DNA of 64,000 nt, taken from positions 1,929,404 through 1,993,403 of the forward strand of contig CAJFCJ010000007.1 in assembly GCA_904063045.1 (NCBI GenBank), read 5' to 3'. The notes beneath the pieces were generated by a model that searched no databases, was not told the origin of the DNA, and worked only from the letters and a program-made list of their open reading frames with translations. The stretch is from Dimorphilus gyrociliatus (taxonomy: Eukaryota > Animalia > Annelida). Every line of letters begins with the position of its first letter. The stretch's first letter is position 1. Below are positions 50,590-60,288 of this stretch, one piece after another. The position numbers and the translations under genes were made by a program.

Positions 50590-52266
50590 ATGGCGACTTG
50601 TGACGTTCAACAGGCCATGAAGCTAAAATTAACAAGTAAACCGCAAGCCATTGAGGTTTTAGGAAAAATAGGTGATATTTTATTTATTATTTTTCTGACT
50701 TTTTATATCAAATAACTACCTTTTATAAATTGTTGCTATTCTCTTGAAAATAGCAAAATTTATATCCGGTTTCAATGATAACCAAATATCGCTCATGTAT
50801 ATATTTAGTTAAAAAAGACATCAATGAGAAAATTGAAGAGGAAGTAAAAAATAAAGAGCAAGCAATCTTGGAACTAGGAGAAATATTTGCTACAACTGGT
50901 CGAGCTGATGATTTAGCTGGATTAATCAAATTAACAAGACCTTTCCTACGATTAGTTAGTAAGGCTAAAGCTGCTAAGTTAGTGAGAACTTTAGTTGATA
51001 AGTTTTTGGATATGGATGCTGCAACTGGTAAAGAAGTATCTCTTTGTCAAGAATGCATAGAGTGGGCAAAGGAGGAAAAACGAACTTTTCTTCGGCAAGC
51101 TTTAGAGGTTGAGACTTTTCTTTTGACACTTGTCTTTTCTGTAATCTTGTATTATTCATAGGCTCGTCTGGTTGATCTATTCTATCGCTCAACTGAGTAT
51201 GAAAATGCGATAAATTTAAGTACTTCTCTTCTTAAAGAATTAAAAAAGTTGGATGACAAGGCTATGCTTGTTGAAGTGCAATTAGCTGAATCAAAAACCT
51301 ATCATGCTCTTAGTAACTTTGCAAAATCTCGAGCTGCTTTAACTTCTGCCAGGACAACCGCAAACGGTATTTACTGTCCGCCAAAACTGCAAGCCGATCT
51401 AGATGAACAATCTGGTATTGGATTTTATGAGCTGGAGTAAACAATCATAAATAATATTTTTTTTTTAAATTAGGTGTTTTACACGCAGCTGACGATAAAG
51501 ACTTTAAAACAGCCTTTTCATATTTTTACGAGGCCTTTGAAGGATATGATTCTATTGAGAGTCCTAGAGCAATCGTATCTCTAAAATATATGCTACTATC
51601 AAAGATTATGTTAAAGCAAGCTGAGGAAGTACAAGCAATGGTTAGTGGTAAACTTGGATTAAAGTATGAGGGACCTGAAATCGATGCAATGAAAAGTATT
51701 GCGGAAGCTGCTAAGAAACGTTCTCTAGCTGATTTTAAAAAGGTTGAAAATCCATTATTTCATGAAAACACATAATGAGGATTTTTCTATCTTTTGTTAA
51801 GACTGTAGATAAATATAAAAAACAATTAGAAGACGACAGGATCGTTCAACATCACTTATCTGCTCTCTATGACAAACTTTTAGAGCAAAATTTGTGCCGT
51901 CTAATCGAACCTTTCTCTCGTGTGCAAATTCAACACATATCAAGTTTAATTAAGCTTCCACAGGTTAACTTGAATTTAATGAAAGATTACTCTTTGATAA
52001 GATTAATTATATTTTCAGGACGTTGTTGAAAAGAAATTATCACAAATGATTCTGGACAAGACTTTTACAGGTAAACCAGGACATTTAAATTTATTATCAA
52101 TTATTCTGATAAACTGTTCACAGGAATCCTCGATCAAGGAGCTGGTGTGCTAATGGTATTTGATGAGAAACCAACCGATGATACTTATTGCAAATCCCTT
52201 GATACTATACAAAGCATGGGTAAAGTTGTTGATTCTTTGTATAATAAAGCGAAAAAGTTGTCATGA
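50590..52266 (+). CDS. PSMD11: 26S proteasome regulatory subunit RPN6, multi-exon
   Basis: [79 protein letters not shown] and [14 protein letters not shown]. Confidence 0.97.
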
Positions 52267-52547
52267 GATATCAATACCGTATAACTAATACATTTGTAAC
52301 ATTTAGCGTGGTACCTTTCAAATAGACGGAATCATATTTTATTTTATTTTTTATTTACTTTACTGGTAATAATAAAGAAAGTTTAAATATTTACAATTGG
52401 GCATGCAAAAATATTAGAATATTTAGAGTAAAAACTTAATGTCTTACGAAGACACTGTACATATCCCGCGAAATGTATTTACATCCGAAATTCTTTAAAA
52501 ACTATATCAATAATGAAAGATGGCTTTTCCAATGAGAACAATGAGAA

Positions 52548-54807
52548 TCAAGATTGTCCGAAAGTGTCAGAGAAATCTTGCGGTATATACGCAGTCTGCA
52601 GTTCTTTGATTTTTTCAGGTGTAGGCGTCCATGTATTGTATCCTCGATCATTCTGAAGAAAAACTATTAAAGTTGCGTGAGCTGATTTCTTATTAACTTC
52701 ATCCCTGTCAATTTCAAATAGGCAATATTAGATATAAATTTGTTTTTAATAACAAACACCTACTTTGGAACAATATGCTGAAAGCCGTGGCGATATTCAT
52801 GTTGCATAGCTGGTATACTCATTTGTTTTCTCTTAAATCTATATTTAAAGACAATAGTTAAATTCGAATAGCCACATGTCAGTTAGGTATTCTTACTTGC
52901 TGCTTTCCATCCTTAGCAATGCTTCTGTGGGAGGATCTCTCCATTCAGGGACAAACACGATGAAAGATAGTGCTTCATTACTCTCTTCTAATAAAGCTTC
53001 AAAATGATCAATCATAGCCACCATTAACTCCTCACTAAATGGTGGATTCGCTTCAAAAGATCCATGTATAGGTTTAAAATCTAAAATATTTCCTCTTGAG
53101 CCGAAGTATCCATCGGTATCAGCAAATGCAGAGCAAAATTGCTTGAAGTAGCAATTCAAAGGTGATGCAAAGCATTCGAAGGTTACGTTGAAACATCGAT
53201 GTAGACATTCAAACACTTTCACGGGTAAAGCTCCTTGTAACCCTGCTCCCTCTGCTTGACCTAATCCGTAATAACCACTGTATCTCCGAAGTAAGCACCA
53301 AACTCGAGCTAAAAAGTGCTCCTTTTTATCATCATCTTTGCAATTGACAGTATAAAGGCGTTCCTGCGGGAGATATTATAGATATTGAACTATAGTCTAA
53401 GTTTCATGAATATACAGTATATATAAAAATAAAACTAACCAGCTTTTCAAAGTAAGGCAGAGATATAATACGCGTATCGCCTTTATGGGTTAGCTTCACA
53501 CTTTGCTCTTCATCATTTCGTATTATGCTGGGCATTCTTGGACATGGTACCGATAGCAAAGCAGGGTAACAATACACCTTCTTTCGTTCAGGCACAGGAG
53601 GCGTAAAAGGTGCTAAAAAATATTGCAAATTTTTTAAATTTATTTTTTATGAAATAGAAGTGTAGCTTACGATTTACTCCGGCTGCTTTTAAAATACTCA
53701 TATGTTTTTCATGGATTTCTTTGGCTGCCTCGGAAGATTTTTCGTATAAAGTTCGACAAATACTATCGATCGAATCATTAGCAACTACCCGTAACTCTTT
53801 ATGACAAAAACGTTTTAAATGGCCCAGCCGTTCTAAATAATCGTCAAAGGAGGCATGTTGGTGAGTTCTTAAGTAAGTAAAAGTTTCATCAACCTTCCAC
53901 TTTATTAATTTACGACAATTAGGACTGGCATTGGGCCTGAATAGAAAAGAGATACATAAACTACTTGTATGTGTCAGAATTTTAGATTAATTTTACCTTA
54001 GATCAACCATCCGCTTAGCTGCTTCCGCATATCTATACAATTGTCTCTTGACATCACTCGTATATTTTGGCTTTACCAAAGCAATAGGTATATCATTCAT
54101 AACTTCTCTTTTTAACGATGGTGATATTGGATTATCACATTTGCTGGGTAAGAGTGGATCATCTCCTTCGTCAACTAGTTTCCTTTCTAACAGCCAACGA
54201 TTAAAAGATTCCGTTGGGGCTTCTATTCCCTCTTTGCTATGGCATAAGTCATCATAGATGATACGAAGTTTTTTTACTGCGTCTGAGCGCATTCGCTCAA
54301 TCTCAGGATGTGGAGGTTTTAATTCAAAATGAGGTCTATCCCACATAAAAACATTCGTGTCCACTTCTAAATTCCATGAATGCCTAATAAAACTTAAACT
54401 TGTATAACATATTTTAGTATTTACTAAAACTAATACCTCAAAGAAAATGATCTTTTTGGTGGTAGAGGCCCCGAATTGTCGGAACTACGACGTCTCCTGT
54501 CATTTGCAATTGTTTGACCGGCTCCAGAGCCGATTCCCAGAGGATCAGTTAAAGAATTTGGTACCTAAGGTATATTGTTTTGTTACATTGTAAAGAGGGT
54601 GAATATGAATTTAACCTGTGCACTAGGCATTTCCCAAAGACTTTGTTGAGTGAATTTATTGTAAAAGTACCATTTACTCAACCGCTGGCTCAAGTTAACC
54701 GTCCATCCAGCTTTTATCAATTCTTCTGTCAATTTGGGTTCGGGTTCAAATGTCAGGGAATTTTGACCACCAACGATAGATGGGGTGGTGGGTGCATTAT
54801 TTTCCAT
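52548..54807 (-). CDS. PCIF1: Cap-specific adenosine N6-methyltransferase (CAPAM), multi-exon
   Basis: N-terminal WW domain ([28 protein letters not shown]); FNRWLLERK; [11 protein letters not shown]; catalytic GSFEANPPF motif. Confidence 0.96.
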
Positions 54808-55463
54808 AGCGAAATCTGCAAGACGCAAGAGGACGATACCGTTTAGACCCTGCCATCTAGTGTCTATTTGCCAAAAAAATATTGTGCGGCACAAAATGGC
54901 GGTTTAGCTTCTATATATGCGTGTGAAAAATCGCCCTTAAAACTTTTTGATTTGGCCGATTTACATTTCTTTTTAAGCGTCATCTCGGTCTACATTTATT
55001 AATGCTTAATATGAACGAAAAATGCTAAGAGTTCAAGCAAGCAAACCTCTCTTATCTGCCTTTCTCGGGAGCGTAGCCCGATCTGACGAACGAAGAGCAG
55101 GCGATGTCGCAGCAAATATGGAGGAAGTTGCTATTGGTTAACATGGACGTTCGCGATAATTTGTTCCATATCTGTCTGATATTTATTTCATTTAATATCT
55201 TTTTTTATTTTATGAACGAAAATTGTGTCATTAATTTTTTTTAGTCAACAAAATGTTAGTGGCCTTAACATTGCGTATAATAAGTCCGCACCAAATGTTA
55301 ACTTAAAATTCAACTTTAATCTATATAAGGTTCATAGTTTTAAAGTTTAGATACTCAAAGTTAAATCATTATTAATCAATTATTTGGTTTATTAGTTTGT
55401 CTTGTATAACAGAGAAAGTCAAGAGCAAGATGGATCTGCTAATTTTGGAAATTTCTTTAACAA

Positions 55464-58400
55464 TTAGTCCAACATTTTTCGAATCATGAAATTTAAGATT
55501 CCGCCATGCCTATAGTAGTCCAATTCAACGTCGGTATCGAATCTAGCAACGACTTGGAAAGATTTTCCATTGTTCATCTGGAGTAAAGAGAAATTAAAAA
55601 AATTTCGTATAAATATTAATCACTAACCTTGACGTTGAGTTTGTGCATAGTGTGTAAATCACTAGGAATTTCGATGGTATATTGCTCTTTTCCCGTTAAT
55701 CCTAAACTATCAGCATTTTCACCAGGTAAATATTGAAGAGGCATTATACCCATGCCTACTAAATTGCTTCGGTGAATTCTCTCGTAACTTTCAGCTATAA
55801 CTGCTTTTATTCCCAGCAAGTAAGGACCTTTTGCCGCCCAATCTCTAGATGAGCCTGTACCATATTCTTTACCTGCTAAAATTATCACAGGATCGTTGGC
55901 ATTCATATATCGTTGTGCAGCATCAAATATATCCATCTACAAAATAAAGTTTAGCTAATGAAAGAATATTTACTGTTATAGCAAACTTACGGTTTCACCC
56001 GATGGCAAATGAATTGTCTTAGGACCTGCTTTTCCAATGAACTTATTCAATAGACGAATATTTGCAAATGTTCCTCGAGCCATAACAGCATCATTTCCTC
56101 TTCTGCTTCCATACGAATTGAATTCTCGTGGAACCAAACCTCTGTCTGCTAAGTAACTGCACAGAAATATTTCAATTAGTTTACCCTAATTAAAGAAAGA
56201 GAATATAGCGTATTACCGAGCAGCAGGGGAATTACGTGCTATGCTTCCTGCAGGAGAAATATGATCGGTTGTGACAGAATCCCCAAAATTCAAAAGTACA
56301 TAGGCATCATTAATGCAAGGAGTTGGAGAAAGTTCCTTCGTCATATTTTCAAAGAAAGGTGGATTCTTAATGTAGGTTGAACGCTCATCCCAGGGGTATA
56401 ACTCATGACATGGAGTATCTAGAGAATTCCATGCCTTATTACCAGAAGTTACGTGAGAATATACATCCCTGAACATAGCAGGCACGACGAACTCAGTCTC
56501 AACTTTTCGAATTTGTTCCCTTGATGGCCAGATATCACGCAAATACACTTCTTTTCCACCCTTTCCAATACCTATTGGTTCAGTTTCAAAATCTATTGAT
56601 ACGGTAGAGGCCAGAGCGTAGGCAATAACAAGAGGAGGGGAAGCTAGATAGTTAGCTCTGGTGAGAGGATGAATGCGGCCTTCGAAATTTCTGTTGCCAG
56701 ATAATACACCACAAGCTACTAAGTCTCCACTTTCAATAGCATCCGCTACTCCGCTATCTAATGGACCACTGTTTCCTATGCAGGTCATGCAGCCGTATCC
56801 GACGATGCTAAAGCCAAGAGCTTCAAGATACTTATCTACTCCACTTTTTTTCAAGTAATACGTAACTACTCCAGAGCCGGGAGATAGACTTGTTTTTATA
56901 AAAGGTTTTACTTCCAAGCCAGCTTCAACAGCATTTTTAGCCAATAATCCTGCACCAAGCATGACAGAGGGATTACTCGTGTTTGTACAGCTAGTTATAG
57001 CAGCAATGACTACTGAACCATGTCCAATTGAATATTTTTTATCATTAAATTTAAATTCAATACTGTTGTTTTGCTTTTCAGGCGAGATAGCAAAACCTTT
57101 AAAACCAACTTTATTGTTAAGACAACTCTTAAAGTCTTCTTTCATTTCTGAAACTGACACTCTGTCATGGGGTCTTTTAGGACCAGAGCAGCAAGGTACA
57201 ACAGTACTTAAATCTAATTCGACAATTTCTGAGTATACAGGGTCAAGTGCAGAATTGGAAAAATCTCTAAACATATTTGCGGCCTTTAAGTACTTTTCAA
57301 CTCTATCAATATCTTTTTCGTCTCTACCCGTTTTTTCTAAATACTTTATGGTTGCTTCATCTACTGCAAAGTAACCAATAGTTGCTCCATATTCCGGACA
57401 CATATTGGAAATCGTTGCACGATCAGCAATACTTAACTTGCAAACTCCAGGGCCAAAGAATTCAACAAATTTTCCGACAACTCCTACTTTTCTTAAATGC
57501 TTTGTAATAGTTAGCACAAGATCGGTTGAAGTTGCTAAATCGGATAATTCGCCTGTAATTTTATATCCAACAACATCAGGAAGCACCATTGAAATAGTTT
57601 GACCTAACATTACAGCTTCAGCTTCAATACCACCGACACCCCAGCCAACGACACCAAGTCCATTTATCACTGAAAAATATCACAGCTGCATGCAAAATAT
57701 ATACAATATAGTTTAAGAAAAATTACTCGTCGTGTGACTGTCAGTTCCAACCAAGCTATCAGGGTATAAAGTGTTATCATTATTAAAGACAACTCTTCCT
57801 AGATATTCCAAGTTCACTTGATGCACAATGCCTGATCCAGGTGGTACGATTAGCATATTTTTCAAAGCCTTTGATCCCCATTTCAAAAACCTAAATCTTT
57901 CCTTGTTACGTTCAAACTCCAGTTCTTGATTCTTTTCCAGAGCGTCAGCACTGCAAATTGTAATTGAGATTCACATTTTCGTTTTATAGATAATTTTTCC
58001 CAATACCTATTTGTTCGTAAGCGATGGAACGGGCATTCAACTTCGAAAGCAGGAAATTTGGCATCAGTACATAGTGCGCAAGACACAGAACGAGCACTTG
58101 TTTTTGAAACATTTGCCGAGCATGACTGTTTAGACCCAACGCCTGGGATTGTATTGCTGCAAAAGGCAGCCACCGTTAAATATTTACTTTAATGCAGTTC
58201 GTATTAAAAAGCAAAACGAACGACCAGCATTGCTATCTACTCGCCTTAAGACCTTGAATACATCAATGGTCAACAGTTGCCGCCCGAGTGAAAATGTCTA
58301 ACTTAAAAACGTTCTGTGTCGGACGCAACAAAAGCCAATTTGATTGTTTTAGCAATCATTATTATTAAGCTTAAGCTAAATTTAAATACAAAGTTCTACC

Positions 58401-59434
58401 ATTTTGCAAAATATGAATATATTTTTTTCTCGTATTAGATATTGTTTTAATTACTTATCACTAAATTATTTTATATCTATCAATAAGTGACTAGATCAAA
58501 GTCCAAAGACGAATTTGTTAAAAAAATTATTTGTTATTTTAGCAAAATCAGTTTCAGAGTAAGAGGTGTAGGAATATTTGTACATACCTTCTAGATACAT
58601 CAACTTGGACCGAATGATCAATTACTAGATCAGCAGGACAAACAGGGTTTATTTTTTGAGGATTTCCACCTAATCGTTTGACTGCGTCTCTCATGGCTGC
58701 AAAATCGACTACAGCTGGCACTCCACTAATTAAAAATTAATAATATAATAAAAAATTATTTAATAAACGATATATTAAAACTGTTAAATTATCTTTCATA
58801 ACTGTCTTACGTGAAATCTTGTAATATGACACGAGCTGGTTTAAAAGGAATTTCAGCGCTACCACCCTTATTTTTTTCCCAATCAAGTATTTTTTCAACA
58901 TCTTTTTCTAGAATCTATTGAATTTATGCGTTTAAAGTATATCATTTCGTAATATTCTTTAAGCTTTCTTACTTGGTAATTATCACAGTTTCGAACAGCT
59001 GATTCTAACAACACGCGAATAGAATAGGGAAGGCGCTCTGTTTGACAAACAACAAAATATTATTTTCAAGGTTATTTAGAATAGGGGACGTGTACCGTAT
59101 CGTTTTTCATCTATATTAGAAATGTCATAATAATTGTACTGTACACCATCAATTTCTACAGACTTTAAGGTGTTTTCAAAAGGATTTTTTCCTGAAACAT
59201 AAAAAATCGGTCATTATTAAAATATCTATGATTTTAAATAGAAGAGTCTCTTATCAAAAGCATGTTTACTTTTTTAGGAATTAGTATCTATTTAAACACC
59301 AAGTTAAGATTCAAGAATATGATATTTGGATAAATAAATATTTATATAAACATTATATACGCAGTTTAATTTTAAACAACCTCCAAAAAGCTATATTTTT
59401 TAGCAAAATTACCTGCAACGCTCATGTTCGCCAT
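55464..59434 (-). CDS. ACO1: Cytosolic aconitase / iron-regulatory protein with IRP1-type active site, multi-exon, plus a candidate IRP2-like cassette exon
   Basis: MANMSVA|GKNPF; [18 protein letters not shown]; [20 protein letters not shown]; [11 protein letters not shown]; [11 protein letters not shown]; [12 protein letters not shown]; [12 protein letters not shown]; [12 protein letters not shown]; [25 protein letters not shown]. Confidence 0.96.
58007..58156 (-). CDS. Predicted 150-nt phase-2/phase-2 exon of ACO1/IRP encoding a Cys-rich insert with CPFH
   Basis: Acceptor ttttgcag|C at 58157/58156, donor AG|GTATTG at 58007/58006; open frame [49 protein letters not shown]; the downstream intron is a typical 56 nt. 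Confidence 0.8.
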
Positions 59435-59543
59435 TTTGAACTTACGATTTACACTCTGTTAAAACGCCATCTGTAGTTGCAGAGCCATCTGATATATATA
59501 TGAAAGTAAAGCATTAAATATTTTTTTCTATAACTCAAAACAA

Positions 59544-60179
59544 ATGGCAACAAGCTCAGGAAAAGATCATGAAATTTCTTCATCAGAATGCTCGGAAGAT
59601 GAGAGTTTTTCGACTTCTGAAATTGCCAAGGTTTCACTATTTTGTCAAATTTTCGTTTAATTCCTATGTTCGTTTCATTGAAAACTACCAGGCACCATTC
59701 AGTATTCAATATCTAAAAGGTGACCTATTTCAACAAGCGGATGATGAAGATTCACTGGCTCATTGTATTAGCGAGGATTTAGCTTTGGGGAAAGGTATCG
59801 CGGCACTATTTAAGAAAAAGTTTGGAGGCATAGACGAACTTAGGAGTCAAAGTAAGAAACTTTGAGTGCAGCTCGCGTATAAATTGACTATACTCTTTTT
59901 TTAGAACCCTATGTTGGTGACATTGCAACTCTTAAACGTGGTAGAAGGCATATTATCAACTTAATAACAAAGGAAAAATTCTGGCAAAAACCCACCTATA
60001 AAACTTTAGAAAATAGTCTTATTTCTATGAAAAAATTTGCAGAACAAAATGAAATTAAAAAAATTATGATGCCTAAAATTGGCTGTGGTTTAGATCAGCT
60101 AAAATGGGAGAAAGTTAGCGAAATAATTATAAAAGTCTTTGAAAGTTCTAATATTTCTGTAACTGTGTGTTCTCTTTGA
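59544..60179 (+). CDS. OARD1: ADP-ribose glycohydrolase OARD1/TARG1 (macro domain), 3 exons
   Basis: [44 protein letters not shown] and [13 protein letters not shown]. Confidence 0.93.
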
Positions 60180-60288
60180 TCGTCTCTGCTTCATCGTCTA
60201 AAAGTCACCATTGAAGGAAAAACTGTATTTTTAAATTTCTAATTAAGAACCCTTTTAACAGTAGAAGTAATTACAAACAATACATTGG

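What the first reader, a model, noticed from the sequence alone, without database searches (positions are those of the whole stretch)
57951..58587. One IRP gene may encode both IRP1-like and IRP2-like proteins through a CPFH-containing cassette exon
Seen: splicing 58588 directly to 57950 gives a clean IRP1-like junction ([26 protein letters not shown]). Inside that 637-nt interval lies a 150-nt exon (58156-58007) with a good acceptor (ttttgcag) and donor (GTATTG), phase 2 at both ends. It can therefore be included or skipped without a frameshift. It adds 50 aa with 4 Cys, ending [13 protein letters not shown]. Established: vertebrate IRP2 differs from IRP1 by a 73-aa Cys-rich insertion at this same point (after DHSLQIDFSK), which contains the heme-regulatory motif Cys201-Pro-Phe-His204 (CPFH). 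The rest of this protein keeps IRP1-type catalytic residues: SGNRNFEGR and GSSRDW, where IRP2 has GNKNF and GNSRDW, plus all three Fe-S Cys. Inference: the IRP2 insertion predates the vertebrate IRP1/IRP2 duplication as an optional exon, and this animal may toggle a heme/redox-sensing module on an active aconitase by splicing. The ORF track shows it only as an anonymous 96-aa ORF. I cannot verify whether this has been described in invertebrates.
Basis: partly seen in the sequence, partly recalled or inferred. Interest (0 to 1): 0.92.

Follow-up and report, generated by a model that had tools for sequence, protein, structure and literature searches.

The report
Ancient optional IRP2-type exon in IRP
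This worm's single iron-regulatory-protein gene really does make two proteins by including or skipping a 150-base exon, and that exon matches the "IRP2-specific" insert of vertebrates, which turns out to be an optional exon already present in sea anemones, corals, molluscs, arthropods, echinoderms and amphioxus.

Summary
The cassette exon (58156-58007, minus strand, 150 nt, intron phase 2 on both sides, GT-AG) is real. RNA-derived contigs carry both the skip joint 58588>57950 and the two inclusion joints. Inclusion is about one third in two data sets of the same organism label, and a 566-nt contig from a relative bridges the exons on both sides.

A syntenic relative keeps the exon at 94% nucleotide identity, against about 80% for the constitutive exons. 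This includes an 89-nt run with no change at all.

The peptide aligns with a module (PNPGGG … CxxC … ΦPxxDxxCPFH) found at the same site in IRPs of cnidarians, annelids, molluscs, arthropods, echinoderms, a hemichordate and amphioxus. RefSeq lists isoforms with and without it in many of these species. HMMER aligns the sea-urchin insert through the human IRP2 insert (NAPNPGGGD; C201-P-F-H204). In Nematostella and amphioxus it is a separate phase-2/2 exon at the same place. Fish ACO1 keeps the intron, but it is empty.

Heme or redox sensing remains untested. I found no paper describing this.

The parts
55464..59434 (-). Whole coding region of the IRP / cytosolic aconitase gene. It has 10 constitutive exons plus the cassette, and encodes 896 aa (skip) or 946 aa (inclusion).
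   Evidence: The spliced model was built from the RNA joints and is open in both forms, with all introns GT-AG. Pfam Aconitase and Aconitase_C domains match. The big exon is 70-73% identical to animal IRP1/ACO1 proteins.
58588..58725 (-). Constitutive exon upstream of the cassette (…[16 protein letters not shown], ending with 2 nt of a Ser codon).
   Evidence: Joints 58725>58811 and 58588>57950/58156.
58157..58587 (-). 431-nt intron upstream of the cassette. It is unusually long for this gene, whose other internal introns between coding exons 2 and 10 are 50-85 nt, and unusually conserved.
   Evidence: It is 75% identical to the relative L001, against 46-77% for the other introns. Several blocks are perfectly conserved.
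58276..58329 (-). Conserved intronic hairpin (an 11-bp stem with one bulged base).
   Evidence: Both arms are conserved in L001 and only the bulged base differs. There is no covariation and the z-score is only -1.65. Its function is unknown.
58007..58156 (-). Alternatively spliced cassette exon (150 nt, phase 2/2), orthologue of the exon encoding the IRP2 insert.
   Evidence: Inclusion and skip joints in RNA contigs. It is 94% identical in L001, where it is 153 nt and in frame. The peptide aligns with invertebrate IRP inserts.
58024..58035 (-). Codons for Cys-Pro-Phe-His, the heme-regulatory-motif-like core.
   Evidence: C, P and H are invariant in all 62 sequences anchored on this motif (a CP[FYM]H selection), and F is present in 57 of 62. 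The motif aligns with C201-P-F-H204 of human IRP2.
57992..58080 (-). 89-nt run (the last 74 nt of the cassette plus the first 15 nt of the downstream intron) that is 100% identical in the relative.
   Evidence: The last 24 codons carry no synonymous change, whereas only 46% of codons in the big constitutive exon are identical. Local RNA folding is not unusual (z = +0.75).
57951..58006 (-). 56-nt intron downstream of the cassette.
   Evidence: Joint 57950>58007.
57727..57950 (-). Constitutive exon downstream of the cassette ([19 protein letters not shown]…).
   Evidence: Joints. It aligns to IRP1 and IRP2 directly after the insert site.

Best explanation
The 637-nt interval is one intron of a single-copy IRP / cytosolic aconitase gene, and it contains a real, frame-preserving, alternatively spliced cassette exon. 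The genome is probably that of the annelid Dimorphilus gyrociliatus.

Shown:
- Skipping the exon gives an 896-aa IRP1-type protein.
- Including it puts 50 residues into a surface loop of domain 1, between ...[10 protein letters not shown] and ADALEKNQ....
- The exon is the orthologue of the exon that encodes the 73-aa 'IRP2-specific' insert of vertebrates. It has the same position and the same intron phase (2/2). It carries the same short motifs: a degenerate PNPGGG (here IPGVG), a CxxC, and ΦP-x4-E/D-x-CPFH.
- The module exists as an optional exon from cnidarians to amphioxus, on proteins that keep all the aconitase and Fe-S residues.

Inferred:
- The vertebrate pair ACO1/IREB2 partitioned the two ancestral splice forms. 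ACO1 kept the intron but lost the exon. IREB2 made the exon constitutive and lost catalytic residues.
- The loop is disordered and acts through short linear motifs. The invariant Cys-Pro-x-His most likely works as a heme-regulatory motif (Cys/His ligation of heme). This would give the long isoform a heme- or redox-dependent control of stability or activity in addition to the Fe-S switch.
- Inclusion is regulated by conserved exonic and intronic RNA elements.
For: Splicing: both joint sets and the skip joint appear in RNA contigs of four runs, and a 566-nt contig bridges the cassette.

Frame: the model is open in both forms.

Conservation in a syntenic relative:
- The cassette is 94% identical, against about 80% for constitutive exons.
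- It contains an 89-nt identical run.
- A 3-nt in-frame indel preserves the frame.
- The upstream intron is 75% identical, against 46-77% for the other introns.

Homology:
- Alignment A2 has invariant P, G, G, P, C, P and H columns that include the window peptide.
- Of 58 insert-bearing IRPs, 55 have CP[FYM]H and 49 have PNPGGG.
- The sea-urchin insert aligns through the human IRP2 insert in one domain, with NAPNPGGGD identical.

Optional exon in other animals: RefSeq isoform pairs exist in Lytechinus, Asterias, Acanthaster, Haliotis, Biomphalaria, Oratosquilla, Nematostella and Branchiostoma.

Same exon position and phase: Nematostella has an 84-nt exon and Branchiostoma a 189-nt exon, both phase 2/2. 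Fish ACO1 has an empty 96-nt phase-2 intron at that spot.

IRP1-type residues.

Disorder: the AlphaFold2 model of the annelid Paralvinella long form has pLDDT 82 overall but below 50 across residues 134-190. This agrees with 'appears to be unstructured' for IRP2 (PMC3048577).

Heme motif in IRP2: Ishikawa 2005, as cited in PMC3904948.
Against: - No functional data exist for any invertebrate long isoform.
- The role of the 73-aa insert in IRP2 degradation was 'experimentally rejected' according to PMC3048577, so the heme-sensing function is contested even in mammals.
- The window peptide on its own does not hit IRP2 by phmmer; the best hit is parkin at E = 0.12. Homology rests on the multi-species alignment, the position and the phase.
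- The PNPGGG motif is degenerate here.
- Inclusion ratios are k-mer depths of assembled contigs, not read counts.
- The library type of X4, X21 and X17 is not on record; they are inferred to be RNA only because their contigs are spliced.
- Translation of the long mRNA has not been shown.
- The human IREB2 exon boundaries were taken from the literature and not checked here.
Confidence: 0.85

Rival explanations
1. The exon is real and homologous to the IRP2 insert, but it does not work through heme. The Cys/His-rich loop would instead bind another metal (Zn or Fe, through CxxC…C-x2-H). Or it would act as a docking, degron or protease-sensitive site for a partner protein.
For: Most bilaterian inserts have C-x2-C 11-15 residues before C-P-F-H, a C2-CH spacing. 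PNPGGG is as conserved as CPFH and has no known link to heme. A review states that the proposed degradation role of the insert was rejected. It also notes that the insert is needed for a tumour-growth effect unrelated to known IRE targets (PMC3048577 and PMC2854138).
Against: Cnidarian inserts lack the CxxC but keep PGG and CPFH, so the universal core is the CP-x-H motif. The loop is predicted to be disordered, not a folded knuckle.
Confidence: 0.35
2. The exon is a regulatory, non-productive exon. Its inclusion would only tune mRNA level or fate, and the peptide would have no function.
For: There is extreme nucleotide-level conservation (89 nt identical, no synonymous changes in 24 codons) and a conserved upstream intron. 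Both are hallmarks of RNA-level constraint.
Against: The exon is frame-preserving, has no stop codon, and keeps its frame after a 3-nt indel in the relative. The peptide motifs are conserved across phyla whose nucleotide sequences are unrelated. In vertebrates the same module is a constitutive part of IRP2.
Confidence: 0.05
3. The insert arose independently in this lineage (convergent insertion into a permissive loop or intron) and only resembles the IRP2 insert by chance.
For: The 49-aa peptide alone finds no IRP2 match. The PNPGGG motif is degenerate here. A sponge-like IRP pair has a different 19-aa Cys-rich insert at the same site, which shows the site tolerates unrelated inserts.
Against: Position and phase are the same in a cnidarian, amphioxus and this worm. 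The motif order is shared, with invariant residues. Other annelids (Paralvinella, P0168) have the canonical form.
Confidence: 0.03

Closest known systems
Vertebrate IRP2 (IREB2) and its 73-aa insert (human chain 6vcd_A, residues about 137-209)
   Same: - The insertion point is the same, after DHSxQxDxxR/K and before xxLxKNQ.
- It is encoded by its own exon (PMC3048577).
- It is Cys- and Pro-rich and disordered.
- It shares the motifs N-A-PNPGGG and C-P-F-H (C201/H204).
- The sea-urchin insert aligns through it in one HMMER domain.
   Different: - In IRP2 the insert is constitutive, 73 aa long, and sits on a protein that has lost aconitase residues (SGNKNFEGR, GNSRDW).
- Here it is optional and 50 aa long.
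- Here it sits on a protein with all the IRP1-type residues.
- Here PNPGGG has degenerated to IPGVG.
IRP1 / ACO1 (cytosolic aconitase, human 2b3x/2b3y, rabbit 3snp)
   Same: The skip isoform is a standard IRP1. It has the aconitase domains, the three Fe-S cysteines, SGNRNFEGR and GSSRDW, and is about 70% identical. Fish ACO1 has a phase-2 intron at exactly the cassette site.
   Different: In the one vertebrate ACO1 examined (fish, Poecilia) there is no cassette in that intron (96 nt). This gene has one and uses it in roughly a third of transcripts.
Computationally predicted 'cytoplasmic aconitate hydratase-like isoform X1/X2' entries of invertebrates in RefSeq (e.g. Strongylocentrotus, Asterias, Haliotis, Biomphalaria, Magallana, Nematostella, Branchiostoma)
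   Same: They show the same alternative exon at the same site, with the PNPGGG…CPFH module, on aconitase-competent proteins.
   Different: These are database predictions without any stated link to IRP2. In ten full-text searches I found no paper that describes them. Insert length ranges from 27 aa in cnidarians to about 290 aa in decapods.
Heme regulatory motifs (Cys-Pro motifs) of ALAS1, PER2, eIF2α kinase and IRP2
   Same: It is a Cys-Pro dipeptide in a disordered segment with a nearby His. For IRP2, C201 and H204 have been proposed as heme ligands (Ishikawa 2005, cited in PMC3904948).
   Different: Heme binding has not been shown for any invertebrate IRP. The flanking ΦPxxD and PNPGGG motifs are not part of known heme regulatory motifs.

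Membership tests
IRP1 / cytosolic aconitase (ACO1) | Aconitase and Aconitase_C domains | tested here: met
   PF00330 at E = 4e-121 and PF00694 at E = 4e-29 on the window's exons.
IRP1 / cytosolic aconitase (ACO1) | Three Cys ligands of the [4Fe-4S] cluster (human C437, C503, C506) | tested here: met
   [10 protein letters not shown] and [12 protein letters not shown] are present in the spliced translation. The second motif aligns to human IRP1.
IRP1 / cytosolic aconitase (ACO1) | Catalytic Arg and Ser that IRP2 has replaced (SGNRNFEGR; GSSRDW) | tested here: met
   The window has R and S, as IRP1 does. IRP2 has K and N.
IRP1 / cytosolic aconitase (ACO1) | Aconitase activity and IRE binding | not testable with these tools
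   This needs enzyme assays and a gel shift with a ferritin IRE.
IRP2 (IREB2) | Cys/Pro-rich insert in domain 1 at the DHSxQxD…KNQ loop, with PNPGGG and CPFH | tested here: met
   Met in the inclusion isoform only. CPFH is exact and PNPGGG is degenerate (IPGVG).
IRP2 (IREB2) | Insert encoded by a separate exon | tested here: met
   Shown for the window, Nematostella and Branchiostoma. For IRP2 this is taken from PMC3048577. The human exon boundaries were not checked here.
IRP2 (IREB2) | Loss of aconitase active-site residues and no enzymatic function | tested here: not met
   IRP1-type residues are retained. They are also invariant in 17 insert-bearing invertebrate IRPs.
IRP2 (IREB2) | Insert always present (constitutive) | tested here: not met
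   The skip form predominates: inclusion/skip depths are 649/1257, 7.7/18.1 and 3.6/63.
IRP2 (IREB2) | Iron- and oxygen-dependent degradation via FBXL5 | not testable with these tools
   No data were available, and an FBXL5 orthologue was not searched for.
Heme regulatory motif | Cys-Pro dipeptide in a flexible region | tested here: met
   The CPFH sequence is present. The loop has pLDDT below 50 in the model of the Paralvinella homologue.
Heme regulatory motif | Heme binding through the Cys (and His) | not testable with these tools
   This needs spectroscopy of recombinant protein and of point mutants.
Regulated alternative cassette exon | Both inclusion and skipping junctions in RNA, with the frame preserved | tested here: met
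Regulated alternative cassette exon | Higher conservation of the exon and its flanking intron than of constitutive neighbours | tested here: met
   The cassette is 94% identical against about 80% for constitutive exons. The upstream intron is 75% identical against 46-77% for the others. There is an 89-nt identical run.
Regulated alternative cassette exon | Inclusion level changes with condition or tissue | not tested
   Only pooled contigs were available. There were no iron or heme treatment series.

The most novel reading that the evidence does not exclude
The 'IRP2-specific' insert is not a vertebrate invention. It is an alternative exon that dates at least to the cnidarian-bilaterian ancestor. 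In animals with one IRP gene, splicing would switch between a plain Fe-S-switch IRP1 and a long form. The long form would carry a heme/redox-responsive Cys-Pro-x-His loop on a still active aconitase. After the vertebrate gene duplication the two splice forms would have been hard-wired into ACO1 and IREB2. If so, the function of the insert, debated for 30 years, could be studied in tractable invertebrates simply by deleting one exon.
Probability: 0.4. Interest if true: 0.9.

Novelty: new variant of a known kind. Interest (0 to 1): 0.8.

Why it matters
Reviews describe the 73-aa insert as a feature that sets IRP2 apart from IRP1 and as a product of a late duplication 'in higher eukaryotes'. Its function is still unsettled: a degradation domain was proposed and then rejected, heme binding has been proposed, and a tumour-growth effect has been reported. 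Papers on sponges and an earthworm state that only IRP1 is present.

The data here make three points:
- The insert is far older than IRP2.
- It is optional in one-gene animals and sits on catalytically intact proteins.
- Its invariant core is PGG … Cys-Pro-x-His. That points to which residues matter.

It is also a clean example of alternative splice forms being divided between paralogues after duplication. The model can be tested by deleting one small exon in Nematostella, sea urchin, oyster or this worm.

Tried and rejected
- phmmer of the 49-aa peptive alone against PDB sequences gave only chance hits to parkin and no IRP2. The peptide is too short and diverged, so homology had to be built through other invertebrates.
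- The Rfam scan of the whole window at gathering threshold found nothing, so there is no IRE or known RNA family.
- Folding of the ultraconserved exon half is no better than shuffles (z = +0.75). The intronic hairpin is only weakly supported (z = -1.65, no covariation).
- The first AlphaFold2 run with 17 sequences was unusable (pLDDT 55). A 103-sequence alignment gave pLDDT 82.
- Raw reads of run X24 were uninformative: only 13 reads mapped, all under 90% alike, and they probably come from another organism's IRP.
- The bacterial promoter/terminator scan is irrelevant to this eukaryotic locus.
- The Pfam scan of the insert found no family.
- The Piccinelli & Samuelsson 2007 paper is not held.
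One counted search was badly designed.
- The chance-ORF and convergence readings were rejected for the reasons given under the rival explanations.
Full report
**What is in the sequence.** The finding lies in a gene on the minus strand. The exon before it ends ...GTA TCT AGA AG|gtatgt at 58588. A 150-nt stretch, 58156-58007, is preceded by ttttgcag and followed by gtattg. The next exon begins at 57950 after tttgcag. I built the whole gene from RNA joints. It has ten constitutive exons, all introns are GT-AG, the ATG is at 59434 and the stop at 55464. It gives 896 aa without the 150-nt exon and 946 aa with it, and both forms are open. The other internal introns between coding exons 2 and 10 are 50-85 nt, so the 637-nt interval stands out. 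The inserted peptide is [51 protein letters not shown]. The ORF list shows it as part of an anonymous 96-aa ORF.

**Is the exon used?** Yes, and alternatively.
- Run X4 has the same organism label as one other run, and its contigs are spliced at eight introns, so they come from RNA. It contains the skip joint 57950>58588 at k-mer depth 1257. It also contains both inclusion joints, 57950>58007 and 58156>58588, at depth 649 on a 207-nt bubble contig. That is about one third inclusion.
- Run X21 gives 7.7 against 18.1.
- Run X17 has a 566-nt contig running E4-E5-cassette-E6, with 107 and 138 nt on either side of the cassette.
- The metatranscriptome X7 has an inclusion contig (depth 3.6) beside a 2859-nt contig of the skipped form (depth 63).
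- X17, X21 and X7 carry the sequence variant of a close relative (a 153-nt cassette), so the event is shared between species.
- A coral metatranscriptome (X1) shows only the skip form, at low depth.
- These depths are assembler k-mer depths, not read counts.

**Conservation in a relative.** The best protein match to the large exon (P0001, 91% identical) comes from a 43-kb Logan contig (L001). That contig has the same neighbours: sestrin, RPN6 and ARGLU1.
- The cassette is present in L001 with intact splice sites and a 3-nt in-frame insertion.
- Nucleotide identity is 94% for the cassette, against 71-94% (80% in the large exon) for the constitutive exons. It is 75% for the upstream intron, against 46-77% for the other introns.
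- The last 74 nt of the exon plus the first 15 nt of the next intron are identical.
- The last 24 codons carry no synonymous change, whereas only 46% of codons in the large exon are identical. The chance of that is about 1e-8.
- Local RNA folding does not explain this, so splicing-control sequences are the likely cause.
- A conserved 11-bp hairpin lies in the upstream intron, but it has no covariation support.

**What the insert is.** Alone, the 49-aa peptide finds nothing meaningful among PDB sequences. A motif scan of the IRP hits was more informative.
- It showed a sea-cucumber protein with a 48-aa insert at the same point.
- A region-restricted search with that protein returned insert-bearing IRPs from sea urchins, starfish, a chiton, gastropods, an annelid, a millipede, a tick, a mantis shrimp and spiders.
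- A profile search added bivalves, a scorpion, decapods, a hemichordate, amphioxus, and the cnidarians Nematostella and Porites.
- A search of 1.8 billion cluster representatives added vertebrate IRP2 and further crustacean-like forms.
- Of 58 insert-bearing proteins, 55 have CP[FYM]H, 49 have PNPGGG and 40 have CxxC.
- Anchored on the motif, the consensus is Φ-P-Φ-x-D-x-x-C-P-F-H-x3-T/S.
- The window peptide aligns with these column for column. The invariant columns are P, G, G (of PNPGGG), P, and C-P-x-H.
- HMMER aligns the sea-urchin region through the human IRP2 insert as one domain. NAPNPGGGD is identical and CPYH lies over C201-P-F-H204. IRP1 matches only as two flanking pieces.
- No Pfam family covers the module.

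**Optional exon, same place, same phase.** RefSeq lists forms with and without the insert in the same species:
- Lytechinus 950/895
- Asterias 957/896
- Acanthaster 946/937/896
- Haliotis 945/894
- Biomphalaria 984/892
- Oratosquilla 1174/895
- Nematostella 920/892
- Branchiostoma 958/895

In the genomic loci, the Nematostella cassette is one 84-nt exon and the Branchiostoma cassette one 189-nt exon. Both are flanked by phase-2 introns after the same Arg-Ser/Lys codon, as in the window. Fish ACO1 has a 96-nt phase-2 intron at the same point with nothing in it.

**The host protein stays IRP1-like.** The window has [27 protein letters not shown] and [10 protein letters not shown]. Human IRP2 has K for the Arg and N for the Ser. 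These residues are invariant in 17 insert-bearing invertebrate IRPs.

**Structure.** An AlphaFold2 model of the annelid Paralvinella long form (103-sequence alignment, pLDDT 82, pTM 0.82) leaves residues 134-190 below pLDDT 50. These lie between a strand and a helix of domain 1. This agrees with the description of the IRP2 insert as unstructured (PMC3048577).

**Organism.** Another note of this scan names the genome as the annelid Dimorphilus gyrociliatus. I did not verify this. It fits the very compact gene arrangement, the roughly 55-nt introns, and the nearest tree neighbours, which are Paralvinella, a chiton and Capitella.

**How it most likely works.**
- Shown: splicing yields two proteins that differ by a disordered 50-residue loop carrying an invariant Cys-Pro-x-His.
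- Inferred, at about 0.4-0.5: the loop is a heme-regulatory motif, as proposed for IRP2 (Ishikawa 2005, cited). It would add heme/redox control to the Fe-S switch.
- The main rival, at about 0.35, is another metal or a partner-docking or degron role. The degradation role of the insert in mammals was rejected, and PNPGGG has no known link to heme.
- Cnidarian inserts lack CxxC but keep PGG and CPFH. That makes Cys-Pro-x-His the universal core.

**Evolution.** The simplest reading is an alternative exon present in the cnidarian-bilaterian ancestor. In vertebrates it was then divided between ACO1 (exon lost, intron kept) and IREB2 (exon fixed, catalysis lost).

**Novelty.** Reviews and papers on sponges and an earthworm describe the insert as IRP2-specific and describe those animals as having only IRP1. 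Ten counted full-text searches found no description of this exon outside vertebrates. The isoforms do exist as unremarked automatic predictions in RefSeq. The library I could search is limited to open-access papers, so prior description cannot be excluded.

Noticed in passing
window 58276-58329 (minus strand): A conserved hairpin sits in the intron upstream of the cassette. It has an 11-bp stem, and only the bulged base differs in the relative. Other perfectly conserved intronic blocks lie around 58225-58260.
   Followed up: partly
P0020 / P0010 (JGI contigs; group with the sponge Geodia in the tree): Two 97%-identical IRPs differ by a clean 19-aa Cys-rich insert (MNVPMVCQCGGCVMQGRES) at exactly the same site. 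The insert has no PGG or CPFH. This may be a sponge version of an alternative micro-exon in the same intron.
   Followed up: partly
P0183 (Batillaria), P0253 (Octopus), Babylonia isoforms X1-X4: Some molluscan isoforms carry only the PNPGGG half of the insert without CPFH, and Babylonia has four length variants. The module may therefore be split over two independently spliced exons in some molluscs.
   Followed up: no
P0136, P0195, P0205, P0207, P0211, P0218, P0223, P0251, P0258 (malacostracan crustaceans): In malacostracan crustaceans (decapods, a mantis shrimp and krill) the insert is expanded to about 230-290 aa of low-complexity Pro/Ser-rich sequence between a P(N)PGGG-like start and …GIPIQDxVCPFH. 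The insects in the lists show no insert at this site.
   Followed up: no
runs X1, X7, X9, X12-X15 (coral and other metatranscriptomes): Transcripts of this animal or close relatives turn up in coral and marine metatranscriptomes. About half of the cassette's sampled 31-mers occur in runs filed under at least six other organism labels. This is probably small worms living in the sampled material.
   Followed up: no
window 59413-59434 and 59191: The first coding exon is only 22 nt (MANMSVA-). An aligner placed the exon 2 start at 59198 because the polypyrimidine tract mimics the end of exon 1. The canonical junction is 59413|59191.
   Followed up: yes
window about 50700-55000 and 59500-60200: The neighbouring genes are tightly packed. 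They are an RPN6-like proteasome subunit, a WW-domain PCIF1-like gene on the minus strand, and a macro-domain-like ORF on the plus strand directly upstream of the IRP start.
   Followed up: no
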